Of a stretch of 54,184 nt of DNA, positions 1,640-51,850 are shown piece by piece (positions within the stretch are counted from its first letter, which is position 1; each line of letters begins with the position of its first letter). The stretch is from Octopus bimaculoides (taxonomy: Eukaryota), in contig NC_068989.1 in NCBI RefSeq assembly GCF_001194135.2, positions 27,947,398-28,001,581 of the forward strand. The letters are read 5' to 3'. The notes beneath the pieces are model-generated. The model was not told the DNA's origin and searched no databases. It saw nothing but the letters and a program-made list of their open reading frames with translations. A program made the translations under genes and the position numbers.

Positions 1640-2318
1640 TAACTGCCATGTATACTCGGTCGGTTGTTGGAAATAAGGTAAAGGAAGACTCGTCCGAGAA
1701 AACATTCTACCACTGCTCTATGGACCAATTCTGTAGGGTTTTACTCCACTCTAAACGCTTGCAACGTTTGTTTTTTGAAAGCAGTGGTTTTTTTTATTAC
1801 AGCCCTTTGTGCCATTCCTGGCGAACAGTTTTTGTGGAAACTGGGTTCTCGAGGTGATGATTAAACTCTGCAGTAATTTTGGAAGCTGTGCTTTTGTGAT
1901 CGTTTCTAACAATTCGCATAAGAGTCCGACTGTCTCTATCTGAAAGTTTTGGATTTCTTCCGGACTTTTGGTTCGACGAAGAGGCTTTTCCCTCTTTATC
2001 AAAGGTTGTCATTACTTTCGAGTCAGTACTTCTTGATACACCAAACATTTTGGCTGTTTTCGTTATGCTAGCGCCTACCATACGAGCACCAACAATTTGA
2101 CCTGTTTGAAAGTCCGATAGATCTGTCATTTTAATGATTTTTAATTACTTTTTTCTGATGATATCTGAAAAGAAACGGCAATTTCAGCAAAACATATTTA
2201 GCAACACTAATAATAAATCAAAAGGCATAATAATAAACAAGCTTTTGACGGTTTTCTAGATATTACAAAATTATGATGCTATGATGCAAGGTGTTTCCAT
2301 TATTTTGTCCAACCACTG
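1640..2318 (-). mobile_element. Tc1-family DNA transposon, 3'-truncated and decayed
   Basis: Minus strand starts TA|CAGTGGTTGGACAAAATAATGGAAAC (Tc1-type TIR, TA at 2319-2320). ORF 1797-2129 encodes the HTH region (DLSDFQTGQIVGARMVGASITKTAK...SGRNPKLSDRD). A shifted frame then gives KRLEWSK...VFSDESSF (first D of DDE). Confidence 0.9.
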
Positions 2319-14841: not shown

Positions 14842-15565
14842 ATGTACAAACACGGATTGAAACACATTTCCTTAGTGCCCTTAATGTGCACTTATATTTC
14901 ACTTATTTTGATAATTGGAACAACATTTTCTCTGGCTTTTGAAAATTCTGCGACCGAAGCATCAGTCAGAAACACAACGGTAGAGGGCTATTACACATAT
15001 CAATATTTAGATCTGAATGCAACAGATGATGATATAAATGAGTATGGAACATCTGATGGAGGAAAAAGTGAAACGAATGATGTTGCTGGCTCTGTCGATG
15101 ACGATGACGATATTGTTTCTAAATTTCTCAGTCTTGTCGAAGAATATAAGAAGAATAAGAAAAACTGCACAAAAGGTACATCATATAATCTTGGCGCGGG
15201 TGTAGTGCGTCAGTATGGTTTAAACAGGTTCAAAAAGCAAGCAGATGTCGCCTTAAGTAGAGCTAACCTCCTTACAAGACTTTGGAAGAATGACCCATCA
15301 GGTTTGATGGATTCAGAGTTTCTTCTATATTCCAGTGTTAGAAATATGGTCGAAGGTGACCCTGATATGTTTGCAGCTGGAAATTGTTATAACGTCAATG
15401 AATACAAGGATTATTACTTATTCTGTCCTTACGCTTATATCATGCCTGATGGGCGTATCAACGTTAAAGATTTGTCAGTTGAATACGATTACTATACAAA
15501 CGATTGGTTTTACAACTGCAGAGTAAGTGCTAATAAACGAATACAAACAGCAAATTATACAGTTG
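14842..15565 (+). CDS. First coding exon of a GPR158/GPR179-like class C GPCR (signal peptide plus extracellular Cache-like domain)
   Basis: ATG at 14842 begins a hydrophobic signal peptide (LVPLMCTYISLILIIGTTFSLA). Motifs DIVSKFL..VE..NCTKG...RFKKQADVALSRANLLTRLWK, LYSSVRNMVEGDP, FCPYAY...VKDLSVEYDY...WF match my recollection of invertebrate GPR158-like ectodomains. Acceptor at 14695, phase-1 donor G|GTAAGT at 15566. Confidence 0.78.
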
Positions 15566-24443: not shown

Positions 24444-26907
24444 TGTATGTAGGCACATAACATATTATGTATGAATATATATATATATGCGCGCGCGCGC
24501 ATCTCATGTTATTTAAAAAGGTAAAGCGCTTTATTATTGAAAGCAAATACAGGCGAATGAATACGCAAGTTAATGTACGTAGCGCATGGAAATTCCTCAG
24601 CTGAGCAAATAGCAATAAAATAGTGAATTTTTTGCTGCTCGAAAAATATGTGTAATGATTTCTTTAAGATTAGAGTAGGTTCCAACCTATTTATGCTGTT
24701 GACTATTATGTCTTATTTTTTTCATTATTCTCCTTATCATAACACATATGCTAGTTATTCTTCTTGTGAATATTGTTTAATATACACACAGCTATGAAAA
24801 TATTTTCTTTATACGTATATAAAAATTATGTAAAATAAGAAACCAGGGTGCCAACCAGACTATCGGATGTTGTTATACATCGTTGGTCAATATGCGATTC
24901 ATAATGATTTTGCTTTCGAATATCGCCACATCGCGAGCTAGTTGAGCTATTCCGTCAAAGGGTTAACCATCTGCAGCTGGGTTGACTGTGATAATCTAGT
25001 GACTGTGTGTGCAATATCTTAGCTCACGCCTCCTACATGTAATAAATGCATCTAAGAAATATTTGTATCTAAAAAGCAATATCCGATATGATGTTACAAA
25101 ATAGCAACCGATGATGTTTTTTCTGAGGCCTTCACGAATTTGCATGCATGATTGATTTTTAACATCTTGACAGCCAGACAGTTAAGGAGACTTATGCTCG
25201 GCAGATTTGTCAGTGATTTTTGTATCGTTTCTCCTTAATCATTTTTATTGATCTTGATATTCGTCCCAACCATATATTCTCATAGCTTCATATACTCTGT
25301 TGAGCCATTTGAACGACTGACTATGAACTTGCTGTTATAGCTCTCCCCATTGTCTTTTTCCTGTATGTATTATCCGTTTTCTTGTTCGTTCTTCTACATA
25401 TCCTTCCACCAACTTAACCATCACATTTAATATTAATTCTTTTCCACCCTTACTTTTAAGACTTCTATATACTAACTACAAAATTGACTTCCACCTCTCT
25501 CTTTCTCTCTCCCTCTCTCTGTAGATATAACTTCTTATATATATTGAGCATTTTCGACCAGCAAAATTTATTCCATCTGAAAATGTCGCAGGGGACTATA
25601 ACTTAGATTTCTGTTATTTCGTAAACATTTACTCACATCAATCTAGTACAAATATATGTGCTAGTAATGCATACTACTGCCACTTACTGACCCCCAAACA
25701 GTTACAAGGTCAGCTTCAGAATTATCTTTCTTAACCGTCATATTCGTGTATGATATCCCCCGATATCTACCAATCTATAAACAACTAATACGAAATTTCT
25801 TTTCCATGCATTCTCTTTAATGATATTTATATATACATCTACATAACTTCATTTGAATCCATTCATGTCATATTAACAACATGTCCACCTATCTAATTTT
25901 ATTTCCAATGACTCGACCGGTGCTTTTCTTGTTGCCAACCCTTACTTACCTGGATTACGTCTTTCATCATTTGGTGTCGGACTTTAGTGAAGAGATCTGA
26001 TCTCAGCACTAATTTGTCTATATTTATACGTCTATTGTGGTACACATACCTATTCCACCATTGAACTTCTCTGCTTTATCATCTGAAATGTAAGATCTTT
26101 CCTACCCTGATGACGGAGGCTCGATTTCTCCAATGATGACAGCTTCCATTACGGCTACATATTGTGAAGAACTACATCTACCAATATTATGACGGATCTC
26201 CGAGCCCGCAGAAACAGCTATTGGATTTATAACACCTTTCTTCCATCCCTTTAATTTTCTCAGTCGTTTGTTTTCTGTGTAAGTTGTATCTATTAATATA
26301 AATATCTATATATTTATAATTAAATATTCATCGTCTGAAAGTTTCTACTCTCTGCTTTCTCTCAGTTTTCTTTTACACACAACACAGATACACATACACA
26401 CAAGCACACGCATACATATACATATACATACATATATATANNNNNNNNNNNNNNNNNNNNNNNNNNNNNNNNNNNNNNNNNNNNNNNNNNNNNNNNNNNN
26501 NNNNNNNNNNNNNNNNNNNNNNNNNNNNNNNNNNNNNNNNNNNNNNNNNNNNNNNNNNNNNNNNNNNNNNNNNNNNNNNNNNNNNNNNNNNNNNNNNNNN
26601 NNNNNNNNNNNNNNNNNNNNNNNNNNNNNNNNNNNNNNNNNNNNNNNNNNNNNNNNNNNNNNNNNNNNNNNNNNNNNNNNNNNNNNNNNNNNNNNNNNNN
26701 NNNNNNNNNNNNNNNNNNNNNNNNNNNNNNNNNNNNNNNNNNNNNNNNNNNNNNNNNNNNNNNNNNNNNNNNNNNNNNNNNNNNNNNNNNNNNNNNNNNN
26801 NNNNNNNNNNNNNNNNNNNNNNNNNNNNNNNNNNNNNNNNNNNNNNNNNNNNNNNNNNNNNNNNNNNNNNNNNNNNNNNNNNNNNNNNNNNNNNNTATAT
26901 ATATATA

Positions 26908-27072
26908 CGACGGGCTTCTTTCAGTTTCTGTCTACCAGATCCGCTCGCAGGGCTTTGGTCGGCCCGAGGCTATAGTAGAGGACACATGCCGAAGGTGCTA
27001 CGCAGTAGGACTGTACCCGGAACCGTGTGATTGGTAAGCAAGCTACTTACTACACAACTACTCCTGCGCCTA
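26908..27072 (-). mobile_element. tRNA-derived SINE, 5' portion
   Basis: Minus strand has an A-box-like head and a GGGTACAGTCC B-box-like motif. The sequence is homologous to the copies at 29085 and 33463. Confidence 0.8.
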
Positions 27073-33462: not shown

Positions 33463-33950
33463 TCTTTTACCTGTTTCAGTCTTTTGACAGTGGCCATCCT
33501 GGAGCACCGCCTTTAGTCGAGCGAATCGACCCCAGGACTTATTCTTTGTAAGCCTAGTACTTATTCTATCGTCTCTTTTGCCGAACCGCTAAGTTACGGG
33601 GACGTAAATACACCAGCATCAGTTGTCATGCGATGTTGGGGGGACAAACAGACACACAAACATATACACACAAATATATACACACACACATACATATATA
33701 TATATATACATATATACGATGGGCTTCTTTCAGGTTCCGCCTACCAAATCCACTCACAAGGCTTTGGTCGGCCCGAGGCTNNNNNNNNNNGGGCTTCTTT
33801 CAGGTTCCGCCTACCAAATCCACTCACAAGGCTTTGGTCGGCCCGAGGCTATAGTAGAAGACACTTGCCCAAGGTGCCACGCAGTGGGACTTCACCCGGA
33901 ACCATGTGGTTGGTAAGCTAGTTATTTACCACACAGCCACTCCTACGCCT
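33463..33950 (-). mobile_element. tRNA-derived SINE, full length
   Basis: Minus strand reads AGGCGTAGGAGTGGCTGTGTGG...CCGGGTGAAGTCCCACTGCGTGGCACCTTGGGCAAGTGTCTT, with A/B-box-like motifs and a simple-repeat tail. It contains a 60-bp assembly duplication around a 10-N gap. Confidence 0.88.
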
Positions 33951-34066
33951 GGTATATAAAATATTCATCTTTTTAAAATGTTCGATATCATAAATATCTA
34001 GACATCTGTACAAATGGAAAATTTTGAAATATACGCCTTGTACAAAATAACAAATGAAAATGATCA

Positions 34067-34437
34067 ACTGCGTGGCACCTTGGACAAGTGTCTTCTACTA
34101 TAGCCTTGGGCCGACCAAACCCTTGTGAGTGGATTTGGTAGACGGAAACTGATAAAAACCCGTCGTATATATGTATATATATATATGTATATGTATGTCT
34201 GTGTATATGTTTGTGTCTTTGTTTGCCACCCACCCACCCCACATCACTTGACAACCAATGCTGGTGTGTTTATGTCCCCGTAACTTAGCGGTTCGGCAAA
34301 AGAAATCGATAGAATAAATACTAGGCTTCCAAAGAATAAGTCCTGGGGTCGATTTGTTCGACTAAAGGCGGTGCTCCAGCATGGCCACAGTCAAATGACT
34401 AAAACAAGTAAAAGACTAAAAGACTAAAAGAGTAAAA
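34067..34437 (+). mobile_element. Same SINE family, 5'-truncated, opposite orientation
   Basis: Starts ACTGCGTGGCACCTTGGACAAGTG and ends with an (AAAAGACT)n/AAAAGAGT tail. It is homologous to the reverse complement of 33463-33890. Confidence 0.88.
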
Positions 34438-35289: not shown

Positions 35290-38200
35290 ATGGTGGCGTT
35301 GGAATGTGGAGGAGGCGAAAGTGGGGAAAGCAACCGGGGTAGGGTGACGGTGGGGTAAATGTGGAGTATGTGGGAGTGGGTGTAAGGGATAGGGTGGGGA
35401 TGGGATGAGATGGATAGGGAAGGTGGGGTTGGATTGGGTAGAGGTTGGGTTACGAGGGAGGAGAGACGATGAAGGGCGAGGGGAGGGAGAAGTTGGGTAG
35501 GAGTGAAGAGAATAGAGAAGGAGAGTAGGAGTGAAGAGAAAAAGTAGGAGTCGGAGCAAAAGAGTAGAGGTGGGTGGGAGGAAGTAGGTGTGAGAGGGAG
35601 AGAGGAGAGGGGAGGAAGTTTAGATGAAGAGGGGAGGAGGGTTAGATGAAGAGGGGAGGAGGTTGAGCCTAGGTGGTGCAAAGGAGCGAAGAGAGAAGAT
35701 TAATCCCTGTTCACGGCAAAGACGGGAGTCCGGATGGCCCCTGTGCACGGACAATGCGAACACAGACAGGTGTTGCAAAGAGTGACCGGTAGACTGGAAA
35801 TGGCGCGAGACCGGAGTGTCATTGCCGAGTCGGATGTCTCGGATGTGTTCCGCGAACCGGTCAGCCAAGCGGCGTCCCGTTTGCCCNNNNNNNNNNNNNN
35901 NNNNNNNNNNNNNNNNNNNNNNNNNNNNNNNNNNNNNNNNNNNNNNNNNNNNNNNNNNNNNNNNNNNNNNNNNNNNNNNNNNNNNNNNNNNNNNNNNNNN
36001 NNNNNNNNNNNNNNNNNNNNNNNNNNNNNNNNNNNNNNNNNNNNNNNNNNNNNNNNNNNNNNNNNNNNNNNNNNNNNNNNNNNNNNNNNNNNNNNNNNNN
36101 NNNNNNNNNNNNNNNNNNNNNNNNNNNNNNNNNNNNNNNNNNNNNNNNNNNNNNNNNNNNNNNNNNNNNNNNNNNNNNNNNNNNNNNNNNNNNNNNNNNN
36201 NNNNNNNNNNNNNNNNNNNNNNNNNNNNNNNNNNNNNNNNNNNNNNNNNNNNNNNNNNNNNNNNNNNNNNNNNNNNNNNNNNNNNNNNNNNNNNNNNNNN
36301 NNNNNNNNNNNNNNNNNNNNNNNNNNNNNNNNNNNNNNNNNNNNNNNNNNNNNNNNNNNNNNNNNGGGGCGGGGGCGGGGGCGGGAGGGGGAGAAAGCAG
36401 ATGCACGGTCCACGGAACGTGCTCTGGCAAGGGCGGTGTGTATAGTGGTGTGGGGGTATTCACATAGGATGAAGTGGCGAGCCATGAGTTGAGACTGAGT
36501 CTCAGTCATGGTCGTCACTGTAGAGCCTGCGTAAACGGAGGAATTGGGAATAGGTGATGGAAAGCTTGGTGTGCTTAGGGTGGGAGGAGAAGTTGTTGTA
36601 TGAGCGTGAGTCTGTATGTTTGTAGTGGATGGAGGTGGTGAGAGTGGAGTGATGAATGCTGACCAAAATGTCAAGAAAGGAGACAGATGTGTCAGAGATA
36701 GTGCAGAAGATAGTGCAGGATAGAAAAATTTGACCAAAGAGAGGAAAGAGTCTAGTTGTTCGCGGGAGAGTGAGGTCACACCAATACAGTCGTGAATATA
36801 GCGACCGTACAGTTCGAGAGTGGGACAAGTGAAACTTGAGAATATTTGGGCCTCAACGTAGCCAACGAACAGGTTCGCATATTTGGGGCCCATTCTCGTT
36901 CCCATGACTACTCCCCAATTGCTGGTAAAAATTACCAGCGAACGAGAAGACGTTGAGTGAGAGGACAAGTTCGGCCAGATGAACGGGTGTGGATGTGTCA
37001 GGTTGGGGGTTGAGGGTTGGGTCGAAGGTCAAGGAACTGTTGAAGTGCACGCAGCCTCTCGTGGTGAGGGATCACCGTGTTAAGGCTCTGGATATCGAGA
37101 GTGAAAAGAAGTTTAGAGGGGCCAGGAAGGAAGGAGAAAGAGTTGAACAAACGAAGTGCATGGTTGGTGTCATGGATGTGAGAGGGGAGAGAAGTCACTA
37201 GGGGGCAAAGACACGGTCAAGATATCTGGCGATGAGTTCGGTGGAGCAGTTGCAGGCGGAGACGTTGGGATGGCCAGGGTTGTTGGGTATGTGCATTTTG
37301 AGGAGGAAGTAAATTGTGAGGGTGCGAGGGGTGCGAACAATGAGGTTGGAGGCGGTGGGGGAGACGGGAGGAGGAGATGAGGTCATGGATAGTGGAGGAC
37401 ACAGTTTGTTGGTTGCTGGGAGTGGGGTCAGAAAGTACAAGGCAGTAGAAGGAGGTGTTTTGAAGTTGGCGAAGTGCTTCCGCCTTGTAGNNNNNNNNNN
37501 NNNNNNNNNNNNNNNNNNNNNNNNNNNNNNNNNNNNNNNNNNNNNNNNNNNNNNNNNNNNNNNNNNNNNNNNNNNNNNNNNNNNNNNNNNNNNNNNNNNN
37601 NNNNNNNNNNNNNNNNNNNNNNNNNNNNNNNNNNNNNNNNNNNNNNNNNNNNNNNNNNNNNNNNNNNNNNNNNNNNNNNNNNNNNNNNNNNNNNNNNNNN
37701 NNNNNNNNNNNNNNNNNNNNNNNNNNNNNNNNNNNNNNNNNNNNNNNNNNNNNNNNNNNNNNNNNNNNNNNNNNNNNNNNNNNNNNNNNNNNNNNNNNNN
37801 NNNNNNNNATCGAAGGGCCGAGAGTTCGGTTGGGGAGATGTTCAGATGACGGGTCGTCTAGAAAAGCTAAACCGGTCTACAGCGCGCTGGCAGGCGCGCT
37901 GCAAAAAGATCGACTGCTTGGAACTGGCCAGGAGCTGGCGTCCACTGGGATGGTTGGCGGCCAAGGTCGGTAAAGCAGTCCTCCTCATTAGATGCAGGTG
38001 GAGTGTCGCAGAAAAGCGCACACAGCCTAAAACGGCGCACAAAGCTGTGGATATCGGCACGAGGCCGAAATTCGTTGCTGGATGGAGTGAGGGAGATGAA
38101 GTGCACACTCCTACTGAGGAAGGATCACTCAGCCTCAGAGAGGGGAACATCTAGAGGAATGGTAACAACAGACTGAAGTGGAGAAGAGGTGAATGGAATA

Positions 38201-38965: not shown

Positions 38966-39247
38966 NNNNNNNNNNNNNNNNNNNNNNNNNNNNNNNNNNN
39001 NNNNNNNNNNNNNNNNNNNNNNNNNNNNNNNNNNNNNNNNNNNNNNNNNNNNNNNNNNNNNNNNNNNNNNNNNNNNNNNNNNNNNNNNNNNNNNNNNNNN
39101 NNNNNNNNNNNNNNNNNNNNNTAAAATGCAGAGATACCTATAATAAGACATCTAACCCGCTAGAAATAGCAGCAAAAGACTACATACCACAAAAATTAGG
39201 GATAATTTCGAAAGGGAATGAAACATAAAAACATTTACCAATCTATA

Positions 39248-39325
39248 TTCTGTACCATGGTTTCAAGTCAATTTTAGTAAGATAAAAATTATATATCTTA
39301 CAAGGTCGGACTATCATCAGCAGAA
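39248..39325 (-). ncRNA. Type I hammerhead ribozyme motif (inverted unit)
   Basis: Minus strand reads UUCUG-CUGAUGA-U-AGUC...GACU-U-GAAACCAUGGUA-CAGAA. Confidence 0.65.
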
Positions 39326-39766
39326 ATGACCAGACAACATATGAAGCACGAGTCAATAAGCAGCATGGTTCGTGTTCCTATGTCTAATTTTTCAAAATAT
39401 ACCGCTTATTTGCGGTTTACCTAATGGGCAGCAAATACAAAAATGTCGATTTTCGTTCAGAAAATTAGCCAAGAGTAAGGCATCTCTGCATTTTAAATGA
39501 ATAATACATAGTCTATTGACTGTTTTTTTTTACTCTCGCTAGACCACTGGTGGTAAATAAAATTTCTAAAACAATTTTTTTTGCTACCCTATAATTTATT
39601 AATAATGATAAAATTCTATTTGGCTAATTTTCTGAAAGAAAATCGACATTTTTGTATTTGCTGCCGATTAGATAAACCGCAAATAAGCGGTATATTTTGA
39701 AAAATTAGACATAGGAACACGAACCATGGTGCTTATTGACTCGTGCTTCATATGTTGTCTGGTCAT

Positions 39767-39844
39767 TTCTGCTGATGATAGTCCGACCTTGTAAGATATA
39801 TAATATTTATATTACTAAAATTGACTTGAAACCATGGTACAGGA
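39767..39844 (+). ncRNA. Type I hammerhead ribozyme motif (unit 2)
   Basis: UUCUG-CUGAUGA(39772)-U-AGUC...GACU-U-GAAA(39828)CCAUGGUA-CAGGA. Palindromic helix III ACCAUGGU, predicted cleavage after A39839. Confidence 0.65.
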
Positions 39845-40239
39845 TATAGATTGGTAAATGTTTTTATTTTTCATTCCCTTTCGAAATTATCCCTAATTTT
39901 TGTGGTATGTAGTCTTTTGCTGCTATTTCTAGCGGGTTAGATGTCCTATTATAGGCATCTCTGCATTTTAAATGAATAATACATAGTCTATTGACTGTTT
40001 TTTTACTCTCGCTAGACCACTGGTGGTAAATAAAATTTCTAAAAAAATTTTTTTTGCTACCCTATAATTTATTAATAATGATAAAATTCTTTTTGGCTAA
40101 TTTTCTGAACGAAAATCGACATTTTTGTATTTGCTACCCATTAGGTAAACCGCAAATAAGCGGTATATTTTGAAAAATTAGACATAGGAACACGAACCAT
40201 GCTGCTTATTGACTCGTGCTTCATATGTTGTCTGGTCAT

Positions 40240-40317
40240 TTCTGCTGATGATAGTCCGACCTTGTAAGATATATAATTTTTATATTACTAAAATTGACTT
40301 GAAACCATGGTACAGAA
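40240..40317 (+). ncRNA. Type I hammerhead ribozyme motif (unit 3)
   Basis: UUCUG-CUGAUGA(40245)-U-AGUC...GACU-U-GAAA(40301)CCAUGGUA-CAGAA. Perfect 5-bp stem I, predicted cleavage after A40312. Confidence 0.68.
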
Positions 40318-40984
40318 TATAGATTGGTAAATGTTTTTATTTTTCATTCCCTTTCTAAATTATCCCTAATTTTTGTGGTATGTAGTCTTTTGCTGCTATT
40401 TCTAGCGGGTTAGATGTCCTATTATAGGCATCTCTGCATTTAAATGAATAATACATAGTCTATTGACTGTTTTTTTNNNNNNNNNNNNNNNNNNNNNNNN
40501 NNNNNNNNNNNNNNNNNNNNNNNNNNNNNNNNNNNNNNNNNNNNNNNNNNNNNNNNNNNNNNNNNNNNNNNNNNNNNNNNNNNNNNNNNNNNNNNNNNNN
40601 NNNNNNNNNNNNNNNNNNNNNNNNNNNNNNNNNNNNNNNNNNNNNNNNNNNNNNNNNNNNNNNNNNNNNNNNNNNNNNNNNNNNNNNNNNNNNNNNNNNN
40701 NNNNNNNNNNNNNNNNNNNNNNNNNNNNNNNNNNNNNNNNNNNNNNNNNNNNNNNNNNNNNNNNNNNNNNNNNNNNNNNNNNNNNNNNNNNNNNNNNNNN
40801 NNNNNNNNNNNNNNNNNNNNNNNNNNNNNNNNNNNNNNNNNNNNNNNNNNNNNNNNNNNNNNNNNNNNNNNNNNNNNNNNNNNNNNNNNNNNNNNNNNNN
40901 NNNNNNNNNNNNNNNNNNNNNNNNNNNNNNNNNNNNNNNNNNNNNNNNNNNNNNNNNNNNNNTATATATATATATATATATATA

Positions 40985-50109: not shown

Positions 50110-51850
50110 TGGCGATGACGATGGGGACGAACGTTACCTTACCTCAGTGATAGGAGTTTCCGAAAAACTTTGGTTGTAACGGCGAAAATGAAACTGGACC
50201 TTTAAGGGAAGGTCTCTCGTTCAGTAAAATCAGAGATTGACCATAGTTGTCATCGTAATACAGTATTAGCAGATAATAGAGCTAGGAGGGGGAAGTGGAC
50301 CAGCGAATAAAGCAAGATAGTGATACCGTGCTACTTAGAAAGTGAAACTAAAAGAAGGGAGTATTAAAAACGGATGTTAACACTTTGGGTAGAGAAGGGT
50401 ATGTTTAAAGTGACTGAGCAGAGATTAGTTGATCAAGGTAATGCTATTAGTAGAAAAAAGTGGATTACAGAATTGGAGGTAGAAGAGATAACAAGAGAAC
50501 TGGAAAAGAAAGACCAGGCAGTGGGAAAGGCAAACAACAACATAAGAGATACACTCCAAACCAAAGAAGAACCTAAAGGAAAAAAATTATTATAGCGCTA
50601 CTAATAAGGAAGGGACAACTGGCACAAATTACTTAAGTAATGTTTTTTGAGGAAGATCAGAAGATTTTAGATAAGTTACAGGAAGTAATGAGTAAAGAAG
50701 TAAGAAAACGATTGCCAGCATTAAAAGACACATCAACAAAAGGAAGCTACAAGAAATGACTTAGAAAGTAGATTCTGTTATCAGTAAGAGGGAGACTAAA
50801 ATATAGATGACACTAAATTATTCATCTATGCAGGAGGAGCAGTAGTCACCAGAAGATTAGATATCTCACAGGGAACGAGAGACTACAAAATTAAGTGCAG
50901 ACTTTAAGACAAAATCTGAGTAGAATAGAAGCCTGAAAAACAAATAAGTTAGGAAACAAAAGATGCTTAGTAAAAGAGAAAGGATTTGGGACAATAATAG
51001 AAGAGTTAAAACAGCGTATCATAGCCGTAGCAGGCAAGCTCTCCAGATATCAGAAAATAATAGATCAATATCAACGGAAAAGATTATTTGAGACAGACCA
51101 GAAGTGGTTTTATAGGCAAATAAATAGTGAGTGGATAACGAAGTACTGAAGATGAGAAATCTAATTCAGAGGAAGCTAGAAAGGTCTGGAGTAATATTTG
51201 GGATAAACCAGTCATTCATAATGGAGCCATTCGTATGGGTAAAAAGGTGAGAGAAGAAGTAGTGAGTGAGAAGCAGCCAGATCTAAAATTGACTAATGCA
51301 TTAATGAGTAAAGTGTTAGGAAAAATGCCGAATTGGAAGGGCCTAGGACCAGATTTAGTTCAAGGGTACTGGCTAAAGAAATTCCGTACTTTATATGGGA
51401 GGGTGAGGGCACAACTTCAGGATTGCCTTAATGGAGGAATAACACCAGATTGGATGACTAGATGGAGGACAATATTCATAATGAAGGATAAGAGCAAGGG
51501 TAATATAGCTAGCAACTATAGACCAATCACTTGCTTACCATTAGTGTGGAAGCTGTTAGAAGGAATGCTTTCAGAAAGCTTTTACGAGCAACCTGACAAC
51601 CAAAAGTTACTACCAGAAGAAGAAAAAGATTGTAGTAAGAAGGCTAGAGGAACGCATGATCTATTATGTATAGACAAAACAGTTCTAAATGAAGTAAAAG
51701 CTAGAAAGAAAAATCTAACAATAGCATGGATAGATTATAAGAAAGCCTGTAACATGATCGCACGCACATGGATAAGTGAATGTTTGAGTATATTCAGTGT
51801 AGTAGACAACATAACAGAAGTATTTAGCTTTGGCATGAAGTAATGGAAAG
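50110..51850 (+). mobile_element. R4/Dong-like element, 5' half, truncated within RT (copy D)
   Basis: RRKWT-like start, MLTLWVEKGMFKVTEQRLVDQ, IIEELKQRI, then ORF 51235-51843 with KMPNWKGLGPDLVQGYWLKKF, NYRPITCLP and AWIDYKKA. Confidence 0.88.

What the first reader, a model, noticed from the sequence alone, without database searches (positions are those of the whole stretch)
39122..40476. ORF-less ~473-bp tandem array with one type I hammerhead ribozyme per unit: candidate retrozyme / circular-RNA-producing locus
Seen in sequence: three copies of UUCUG-CUGAUGA-U-AGUC..(long loop)..GACU-U-GAAACCAUGGUA-CAG(A/G)A, two of them tandem on + and exactly 473 nt apart. Both core boxes, stem I, stem II and a GUA triplet are present. 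Helix III is an 8-nt palindrome (ACCAUGGU) with only a 2-nt loop. Established knowledge: minimal type I hammerheads with palindromic helix III occur in Penelope terminal repeats and in tandem non-coding repeats (newt satellite 2, Schistosoma Sm-alpha, metazoan non-LTR retrozymes). They cleave as dimers from tandem transcripts and release monomers that can circularise. Inference: transcription through units 2-3 would release a 473-nt monomer (39840-40312). The + strand has many T-runs, so read-through Pol II transcription (e.g. the host GPCR intron) is a likelier source than Pol III. Caveat: positions 10.1/11.1 read U/U rather than the usual G-C, so activity is unproven. Both ends run into gaps, so the array may be longer.
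Basis: partly seen in the sequence, partly recalled or inferred. Interest (0 to 1): 0.85.

Follow-up and report, generated by a model that had tools for sequence, protein, structure and literature searches.

The report
Hammerhead-ribozyme repeat in an octopus intron
A short non-coding repeat in an intron of an Octopus bimaculoides receptor gene carries one hammerhead-ribozyme-like motif per 473-bp unit, so it looks like an ordinary retrozyme (a parasitic repeat copied by Penelope-like retrotransposons) in a species where none has been reported; whether it cuts itself is untested.

Summary
Positions 39122-40476 form one gap-bounded contig. It holds 2.1 tandem copies of a 473-bp, ORF-less unit (31% GC) plus an inverted, 5'-truncated third copy. 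Each copy has a complete type I hammerhead-like motif: CUGAUGA, GAAA, GUA, a 5-bp helix I, a 4-bp helix II and the palindrome ACCAUGGU as helix III. Simulated sequence gives about 0.007 such motifs per window.

The window is Octopus bimaculoides. The array lies on the sense strand in a very long intron of a GPR158-like receptor gene. A decayed Penelope-like element (PLE) lies about 1 kb away.

Unit size, GC content, lack of ORFs, a helix III that only works in dimers, and the "partial tandem plus inverted truncated copy" layout all match metazoan non-LTR retrozymes and PLE-type insertions. I rate it a new member of a known kind.

Caveats:
- No Rfam hammerhead model matches.
- Positions 10.1/11.1 are U·U. 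The axolotl HHR_Amex2 ribozyme has the same mismatch and is active.
- Only three near-identical copies were available, so covariation cannot be tested.
- The inverted arm forms a 351-bp hairpin that buries the first + strand ribozyme in any read-through transcript.

The parts
39122..39472 (-). Inverted, 5'-truncated copy of the unit (unit positions 254-473 then 1-131). Its 3' side runs into the gap at 38966-39121.
   Evidence: Inverted repeat with 349-351-nt arms, 97-98% complementary; blastn of the unit; three-copy alignment.
39248..39325 (-). Hammerhead-like motif, copy 1. Helix I 5' strand is at 39325-39321 and CUGAUGA at 39320-39314. GUA ends at 39253. Helix I 3' strand is at 39252-39248.
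39473..39477 (.). 5-nt head-to-head junction (GAGTA) between the inverted copy and the tandem copies.
   Evidence: Sequence; repeat coordinates.
39478..39839 (+). First tandem unit, 5'-truncated (unit positions 114-473). It ends at the predicted cleavage site after GUA.
   Evidence: TRF; blastn.
39767..39844 (+). Hammerhead-like motif A. Position 1.4 is G, giving a U·G pair in helix I.
39840..40312 (+). Complete 473-nt unit between the two predicted cleavage sites. GC is 31%. No ORF exceeds 39 aa.
40240..40317 (+). Hammerhead-like motif B. Position 1.4 is A, giving a U-A pair.
40313..40476 (+). Partial third tandem unit (about the first 165 positions of the unit). It runs into the gap at 40477-40962.
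38966..39121 (.). Assembly gap on the left. (TA)n lies beyond it.
40477..40962 (.). Assembly gap on the right, 486 N. That is long enough to hide the rest of this unit, including a further hammerhead. (TA)n lies beyond it.
   Evidence: the hidden ribozyme is inference.
35662..38106 (-). [quoted passage not shown] It has several frameshifts and stops, three gaps, and 54% GC. It represents the kind of element that could mobilise the array, but it shows no similarity to the unit.
14842..15564 (+). Host exon encoding residues 1-241 of the O. bimaculoides GPR158-like receptor ('probable GPCR CG31760'). The array lies in the intron that follows it.

Best explanation
The block is one insertion of a non-autonomous, non-coding retroelement of the metazoan non-LTR retrozyme type, meaning a repeat derived from or parasitic on Penelope-like elements. 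It sits in an intron of an Octopus bimaculoides GPR158-like gene.

Shown here:
- The unit is 473 bp, AT-rich and ORF-less.
- Each unit carries one type I hammerhead-like motif.
- The helix III palindrome ACCAUGGU cannot close as a stable hairpin in one copy. It forms an 8-bp helix between two copies.
- The layout is partial tandem copies with an inverted 5'-truncated copy abutting their 5' end.

Inferred mechanism:
1. A multimeric + strand transcript folds neighbouring ribozymes into a double hammerhead.
2. It cleaves after GUA and releases 473-nt monomers with 5'-OH and 2',3'-cyclic phosphate ends.
3. A host tRNA ligase of the RtcB type circularises the monomers.
4. A PLE reverse transcriptase and endonuclease copies the circle into multimeric cDNA. 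The cDNA integrates as a tandem with an inverted truncated copy.

In the assembled locus the inverted arm forms a 351-bp hairpin with unit 2. Productive processing would therefore need transcription that starts inside the array, or further units in the right-hand gap. The locus may equally be a young but non-productive copy.
For: - Motif and repeat anatomy.
- Chance expectation is about 0.007 per window for a loose descriptor, and 0 in 300 simulations at the observed strength. Helices I and II accompanied the boxes in only 1 of the 138 loci fetched by the box-pattern scans.
- In a two-unit transcript the inter-copy helix III has pair probability 0.92-1.0. The dimer is favoured at -32.6 kcal/mol against 2 x -9.0 kcal/mol.
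- Of the three variable columns in the ribozyme domain, two lie in the distal loop 2 hairpin. The third changes U-A to U·G in helix I.
- No ORF within the array exceeds 42 aa and there are no protein relatives. There is no tRNA-like part. GC is 31%.
- A PLE remnant lies about 1 kb away.
- Published definitions match. Retrozymes are tandem repeats of 150-450 bp (51-972 bp in the 2026 survey) with low GC, no LTR, PBS or PPT, and type I hammerheads that in some lineages act as dimers (PMC7229834; bioRxiv 10.64898/2026.07.22.740005).
- PLE hammerheads have a 4-5-bp helix I, a palindromic helix III, an unpaired nucleotide after A9, and pairs of motifs on opposite strands 100-700 bp apart (PMC4209133).
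- PLE insertions are partial tandems with an adjacent inverted 5'-truncated copy, and they disturb short-read assemblies (PMC8557442).
- A U·U at the base of helix II occurs in about 60,000 axolotl HHR_Amex2 motifs that cleave in vitro.
Against: - No Rfam hammerhead covariance model matches at gathering score, at E<=10 on 1.4 kb, or at E<=10 on 111 nt.
- G10.1-C11.1 is highly conserved in PLE and canonical hammerheads. Here it is replaced by U·U.
- Nearest-neighbour folding gives helix I a probability of about 0. It prefers a 6-bp hairpin (GUCAUU/GAUGAU) that covers most of the CUGAUGA box.
- The three copies are 97-99% identical. Substitutions are not depleted in the ribozyme domain (3 of 12 variable columns fall in 25% of the alignment length), so there is no evidence of selection.
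- No other genomic copies, transcripts or circular junctions could be examined.
- The unit has no similarity to the neighbouring PLE or to PLE proteins.
- The foldback blocks ribozyme A in read-through transcripts.
Confidence: 0.7

Rival explanations
1. It is a relic. The repeat descends from a hammerhead-bearing element, but the ribozyme is catalytically dead because of the U·U at 10.1/11.1 and the competing hairpin over the CUGAUGA box. The locus then makes no monomers or circles and is inert intronic repeat DNA. At most it is a source of long double-stranded RNA from the foldback.
For: No Rfam match. Non-canonical 10.1/11.1, while G10.1-C11.1 is highly conserved in PLE hammerheads. Predicted helix I probability is about 0. 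The foldback sequesters ribozyme A. Metazoan PLE min-hammerheads have very low activity in vitro in any case.
Against: All core nucleotides are intact in all three copies, and the one helix change is pair-preserving. The same U·U occurs in the active axolotl ribozyme. Copies differ by only 1-3%, while non-coding divergence from O. vulgaris is about 11%. This suggests recent amplification and therefore a recently functional source element.
Confidence: 0.2
2. It is the pseudo-LTR region of the neighbouring Penelope-like element rather than a separate non-autonomous element. On this view the - strand copy (39472 to 39122) is the upstream pLTR of the - strand PLE, and the + strand copies are the usual inverted truncated copy.
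For: The order along the - strand is inverted copies, then a direct copy with a hammerhead, then the PLE ORF. This mirrors the canonical PLE arrangement (PMC8557442).
Against: A pLTR must recur at the 3' end of the element, but nothing similar to the unit lies downstream of the endonuclease domain or anywhere else in the window. No hammerhead motif is found there. Microsatellites and a gap separate the two. GC is 31% against 54%. The PLE is heavily decayed while the units are 97-99% alike. The + strand part is a 2.1-copy tandem without any ORF.
Confidence: 0.06
3. It is an ordinary satellite or foldback repeat in which a hammerhead-like string arose by chance, or an assembly artefact that created the inverted and tandem layout.
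For: The assembly is a gap-rich short-read one and the contig is only 1355 bp. No Rfam match.
Against: The chance expectation of the motif is about 0.007 per 49 kb for a loose descriptor, which is about 7e-5 for a 473-bp unit. The palindromic helix III and short helix I are family-specific traits that my descriptor did not require. The three copies differ from one another at 12 substituted columns, so they are distinct genomic copies and not one sequence reused by the assembler.
Confidence: 0.04

Closest known systems
Metazoan non-LTR retrozymes (Cervera & de la Peña 2020, PMC7229834; Li, Clavereau & Pollet 2026 preprint)
   Same: [quoted passage not shown] Neither has an LTR, PBS, PPT or tRNA-like part. 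PLEs are present in the same genome. Retrozymes are already known in molluscs (mussel, 350-390 bp).
   Different: The 473-bp unit is longer than the 170-400 nt first described, though it is within the 51-972 bp of the 2026 survey. Loop 2 is about 39 nt. Positions 10.1/11.1 are U·U. Only 2.1 tandem copies plus an inverted copy are seen. Expression and circularity are untested. I found no report for cephalopods in the searchable library.
Minimal hammerheads in pseudo-LTRs of Penelope-like elements (Cervera & de la Peña 2014, PMC4209133)
   Same: Both have a short helix I (4-5 bp), a palindromic helix III that requires a dimer, and an unpaired or mismatched nucleotide right after A9. Motifs occur on opposite strands a few hundred bp apart. 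Insertions have the tandem/inverted architecture.
   Different: No RT-EN ORF lies between the motifs. The conserved G10.1-C11.1 pair is absent. The basal helix II is 4 bp rather than 7-8 bp. The unit has no similarity to the adjacent PLE.
Axolotl HHR_Amex2 and newt satellite 2 hammerheads
   Same: Both are tandem repeats of 330-350 bp. Helix III is 2 bp plus a tetraloop. HHR_Amex2 has a U·U mismatch at the base of helix II. The monomers are weak and the dimers much more active.
   Different: They come from a different phylum and I detected no sequence relationship. The amphibian motifs keep recognisable loop 1-loop 2 contacts. Such contacts cannot be identified here.

Membership tests
Hammerhead ribozyme, type I | Core boxes C3-U4-G5-A6-N7-G8-A9 and G12-A13-A14, with an NUH cleavage triplet | tested here: met
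   CUGAUGA, GAAA and GUA are present in all three copies.
Hammerhead ribozyme, type I | Three helices around the core, with helix I open (type I topology) | tested here: met
   Helix I is 5 bp. Helix II is 4 bp plus a distal hairpin. Helix III is 2 bp plus a tetraloop in cis, or 8 bp between copies.
Hammerhead ribozyme, type I | G10.1-C11.1 pair closing helix II | tested here: not met
   It is U·U in all copies. The axolotl HHR_Amex2 is a precedent for an active U·U variant.
Hammerhead ribozyme, type I | Match to the curated covariance models (Rfam hammerhead families) | tested here: not met
   No match at gathering score, at E<=10 on 1381 nt, or at E<=10 on 111 nt. The long loop 2, the U·U and the minimal helix III probably all cost score. 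I had no positive control with a known PLE-type motif.
Hammerhead ribozyme, type I | Site-specific self-cleavage | not testable with these tools
   Needs in vitro transcription of monomer and dimer constructs.
Hammerhead ribozyme, type I | Covariation that preserves the helices across copies | tested here: inconclusive
   Only three copies at 97-99% identity were available. One pair-preserving change was seen (U-A to U·G) and no compensatory change.
Non-LTR retrozyme | At least two consecutive tandem units, each with a complete hammerhead motif | tested here: met
   TRF gives period 473 and 2.1 copies. Motifs lie at 39767-39844 and 40240-40317. The domain MFE of -9.0 kcal/mol is below the -5 kcal/mol cut-off used by Li et al..
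Non-LTR retrozyme | Short, AT-rich, non-coding unit without LTR, PBS or PPT | tested here: met
   473 bp and 31% GC. ORFs are at most 42 aa and have no homologues. No tRNA-like sequence.
Non-LTR retrozyme | Multiple dispersed genomic copies (a mobile family) | not testable with these tools
   No other copy exists in the 54-kb window or in 21 kb of O. vulgaris. No eukaryotic genome collection could be searched by DNA.
Non-LTR retrozyme | Expression as linear and circular monomer RNA | not testable with these tools
   No transcriptome data were available.
Non-LTR retrozyme | Autonomous PLEs in the same genome | tested here: met
   A PLE remnant lies at 35662-38106. PLE families are reported in octopus repeat annotations.
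PLE pseudo-LTR | The repeat flanks an RT-EN ORF and recurs at the element's 3' end | tested here: not met
   There is no ORF between the motifs, and no copy of the unit lies beside the 3' end of the adjacent PLE.
PLE-type insertion | Partial tandem with an adjacent inverted 5'-truncated copy | tested here: met
   Head-to-head junction at 39472/39478, with a tandem to the right. The description is in PMC8557442.
PLE-type insertion | Insertion into a microsatellite, often (TA)n | tested here: inconclusive
   (TA)n lies beyond both gaps. However, most gaps in this window abut (TA)n.

The most novel reading that the evidence does not exclude
The array may be more than a passive parasite. It sits on the sense strand of a 423-kb neuronal GPR158-like gene. 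Its ribozymes could cut the nascent host pre-mRNA. Its 351-bp perfect-arm foldback could feed the very active octopus ADAR or small-RNA pathways. The insertion might then modulate host gene output or silence its own family. A milder version is that octopuses have an active retrozyme family with an unusually large 473-nt circular RNA and a U·U core variant.
Probability: 0.07. Interest if true: 0.7.

Novelty: new member of a known kind. Interest (0 to 1): 0.35.

Why it matters
If confirmed genome-wide, this would extend ribozyme-bearing retrozymes to cephalopods.

It would also add an independent invertebrate example of two things. One is the U·U core variant so far described in axolotl. The other is a retrozyme inserted with the tandem-plus-inverted signature of Penelope-like elements. 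That signature bears on the current proposal that animal retrozymes are non-autonomous PLE derivatives.

On its own, one locus with three near-identical copies is an annotation-level result.

Tried and rejected
- **Rfam:** three searches (whole window at gathering score; 1.4 kb and 111 nt at E<=10) gave no hammerhead match. The only notable hit, MIR2646 at 67 bits against a 245-bit gathering score, is the foldback itself.
- **More octopus copies via proteins:** I searched the concatenated short ORFs of the unit against the protein collection. Nothing was found.
- **Pattern scans:** the metagenome and viral scans with the box pattern returned only chance matches, with no similarity to the unit and 1 of 138 loci showing helices. 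A 20-mer scan of bacterial genomes and viral contigs gave two chance Psychrobacter hits and nothing else.
- **Relatives of the neighbouring PLE:** loci L001 and L002 showed no hammerhead motif and no similarity to the unit.
- **Orthologous intron:** it could not be fetched in O. sinensis or O. bimaculoides v2 because the gene range is too long. The O. vulgaris locus L003 ends about 14 kb short of the site.
- **Exact look-ups of window TE ORFs:** nothing found.
- **Paper supplements:** no sequences to compare.
- **Rejected ideas:** a SINE or Pol III element, because there is no tRNA-like part and there are T7-T9 runs; a coding element; and (TA)n flanks as proof of target preference, because the base rate at gaps is high.
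Full report
**What is there**

Positions 39122-40476 are a single 1355-bp contig between two runs of N, at 38966-39121 and 40477-40962. Tandem Repeats Finder reports one long-period array in the whole window: 39478-40476, period 473, 2.1 copies, 97% matches.

The left part, 39122-39472, is the reverse complement of 39620-39970 (351 nt, 97%) and of 40093-40441 (349 nt, 98%). In unit coordinates, with position 1 at 39840, the layout is:
- an inverted copy covering positions 254-473 and 1-131;
- a 5-nt junction (GAGTA);
- + strand copies starting at position 114 and running through two full ribozyme sites to position 165.

Nothing else in the window resembles the unit. The unit is 31% GC. The longest ORF wholly within the array is 42 aa. 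It has no protein relatives and no tRNA-like part.

**The motif**

CTGATGA-N(20-50)-GAAACCATGGTA occurs three times: 39253-39320 on the - strand, and 39772-39839 and 40245-40312 on the + strand. Shuffled sequence gives none.

Read as a type I hammerhead, each copy has:
- helix I UUCUG/CAG(A|G)A, 5 bp;
- the CUGAUGA box;
- a U·U at 10.1/11.1;
- helix II AGUC/GACU, 4 bp, followed by an internal loop and a distal AU-rich hairpin (about 39 nt in all);
- GAAA;
- ACCAUGGU;
- A17, with cleavage predicted after GUA.

A descriptor with these elements gives 0.007 hits per simulated window at loose settings. At the observed strength it gives none in 300 simulations. Among the 138 loci fetched by the box-pattern scans, only one also had helices I and II. 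The motif is therefore not a chance string.

A single copy can form only 2 bp plus a CAUG tetraloop. The 8-bp helix forms between two copies.

In a two-unit transcript (39740-40340) the inter-copy helix III has pair probability 0.92-1.0. Two isolated domains prefer the dimer, at -32.6 kcal/mol against 2 x -9.0 kcal/mol.

**Weak points of the ribozyme reading**

- No Rfam hammerhead model matches at gathering score, at E<=10 on 1.4 kb, or at E<=10 on a 111-nt slice.
- G10.1-C11.1 is described as highly conserved even in minimal PLE hammerheads (PMC4209133). Here it is U·U.
- The nearest-neighbour model gives helix I a probability near 0. It prefers a 6-bp hairpin over part of the CUGAUGA box. 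Such models do not score the hammerhead's tertiary fold.
- The three copies are 97-99% identical, with 12 substituted columns in 351. Three lie in the ribozyme domain: two in the distal loop 2 hairpin and one changing U-A to U·G in helix I. That is compatible with function but is not evidence of selection.
- One published fact eases the U·U problem. The axolotl HHR_Amex2 family has about 60,000 motifs. It has a U·U mismatch at the base of helix II and a 2-bp helix III with a tetraloop. It cleaves 22% in one hour as a monomer and much better as a dimer (PMC7229834).

**Context**

The exon at 14842-15564 (+) is 100% identical to residues 1-241 of the 810-aa O. bimaculoides protein "probable G-protein coupled receptor CG31760". 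It is 97% identical to the O. vulgaris and O. sinensis proteins. The protein belongs to the GPR158/179 family and has a 7tm_3 domain.

The gene spans about 423 kb in O. bimaculoides. No later exon lies in the window. The array is therefore intronic and on the sense strand.

Non-coding identity to the orthologous O. vulgaris region is about 88.5% over 13 kb. The units differ by only 1-3%. From this I infer that the array, or its last homogenisation, is younger than the species split.

A Penelope-like element lies on the - strand at 35662-38106. [quoted passage not shown] It is broken by several frameshifts, stops and three gaps. It is 54% GC and shows no similarity to the unit. Microsatellites and a gap separate it from the array. 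I treat it as an older, independent insertion. It shows that this kind of retroelement has been active in this genome, as the octopus repeat literature also says.

**What it is**

The features fit the published definition of metazoan non-LTR retrozymes. These are tandem, AT-rich, non-coding units of a few hundred bp, each with a type I hammerhead, in genomes that also hold PLEs. In some lineages the ribozymes work only as dimers. The 2026 survey extends unit lengths to 51-972 bp. [quoted passage not shown] This locus meets both criteria.

The ribozyme itself looks more like the PLE "minimal" class than the canonical invertebrate class. It has a 5-bp helix I with no clear loop 1, a palindromic helix III, an irregular nucleotide right after A9, and motifs on opposite strands a few hundred bp apart.

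The insertion layout is a partial tandem with an inverted 5'-truncated copy abutting its 5' end. This is the layout described for PLE integrations, which are also noted to break short-read assemblies (PMC8557442). It is sequence-level support for mobilisation by PLE machinery.

(TA)n lies beyond both gaps. However, most gaps in this window abut (TA)n, so that point carries little weight.

**How it probably works, and one correction**

The likely cycle, inferred from the families named above, is:
1. a multimeric + strand transcript is made;
2. neighbouring units form a double hammerhead;
3. cleavage occurs after GUA;
4. 473-nt monomers are ligated by a tRNA ligase;
5. a PLE enzyme reverse-transcribes the circle.

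The monomer folds somewhat better than shuffles (-99.9 kcal/mol, z = -2.3).

Modelling argues against this for the locus as assembled. A transcript that begins upstream contains the inverted arm, which pairs with 39620-39970 over 351 bp (-600 kcal/mol, z = -50). In the 39122-40340 transcript every nucleotide of ribozyme A is paired with the antisense arm. The inter-copy helix III probability is then 0.

Processing would need a start site inside the array, or further units in the 486-N right-hand gap. That gap is long enough to hold the rest of the unit with a third + strand ribozyme (inference). The foldback is also a plausible substrate for RNA editing or small-RNA pathways, which is untested.

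**Verdict**

This is most likely a young copy of an octopus retrozyme-type element. That makes it a new member of a known kind, not reported for cephalopods in the literature I could search. Its catalytic activity, copy number and expression remain to be shown.

I could not obtain other octopus copies with the available collections. The decisive conservation test is therefore still open.

Noticed in passing
window 35662-38106 (- strand): [quoted passage not shown] It has several frameshifts and stops and three N gaps, and is 54% GC. Its nearest intact relatives are 50-56% identical over most of the query; one 291-aa fragment reaches 72% over half of it.
   Followed up: yes
window 39122-39970: A 351-bp near-perfect foldback with a 147-nt loop (RNA MFE -600 kcal/mol, z = -50). 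The sub-threshold Rfam MIR2646 match at 39375-39717 is this hairpin, not a microRNA gene. On the sense strand of an intron it would give long dsRNA, a possible editing or small-RNA substrate.
   Followed up: partly
window 39721, 40194 (+) and 39371 (-): A second box, GAACCATG(G/C)T, lies 107 nt upstream of each GAAACCATGGT. In unit 2 it carries the full ACCATGGT palindrome. It could compete for the inter-copy helix III, or it may be an old internal duplication.
   Followed up: no
window 14842-15564 (+): Exon encoding residues 1-241 of the O. bimaculoides GPR158/179-family receptor ('probable GPCR CG31760'). The gene range is about 423 kb, or about 374 kb in O. sinensis. No further exon lies in the remaining 38 kb of the window.
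   Followed up: yes
window 26897-27021 and 33493-34385; L003 15908-16275: A short interspersed repeat (starts GGGCTTCTTTCAG...) abuts (TA)n and gaps twice in the window. It is also present in the O. vulgaris locus at 81-87% identity. It is probably one of the abundant octopus SINEs.
   Followed up: no
window 1797-2129 (-) and 51235-51843 (+): A Tc1/mariner-type transposase N-terminal fragment (weak HTH_Tnp_Tc3_2 match, below Pfam's cut-off) and a LINE-type reverse transcriptase fragment (weak RVT_1 match, also below cut-off).
   Followed up: partly
all 18 N gaps of the window: Most gaps are bordered by (TA)n or other microsatellites. The assembly breaks at simple repeats, so a microsatellite next to a gap says little about a transposon's target preference.
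   Followed up: yes
L002 (ENA contig, tandem PLE copies, period about 3158 bp) and L001: Intact relatives of the window's PLE from other animals showed no hammerhead motif with my descriptor, in the intervals between tandem ORFs or in the flanks. Either this PLE lineage has divergent cores or the descriptor is too strict.
   Followed up: partly
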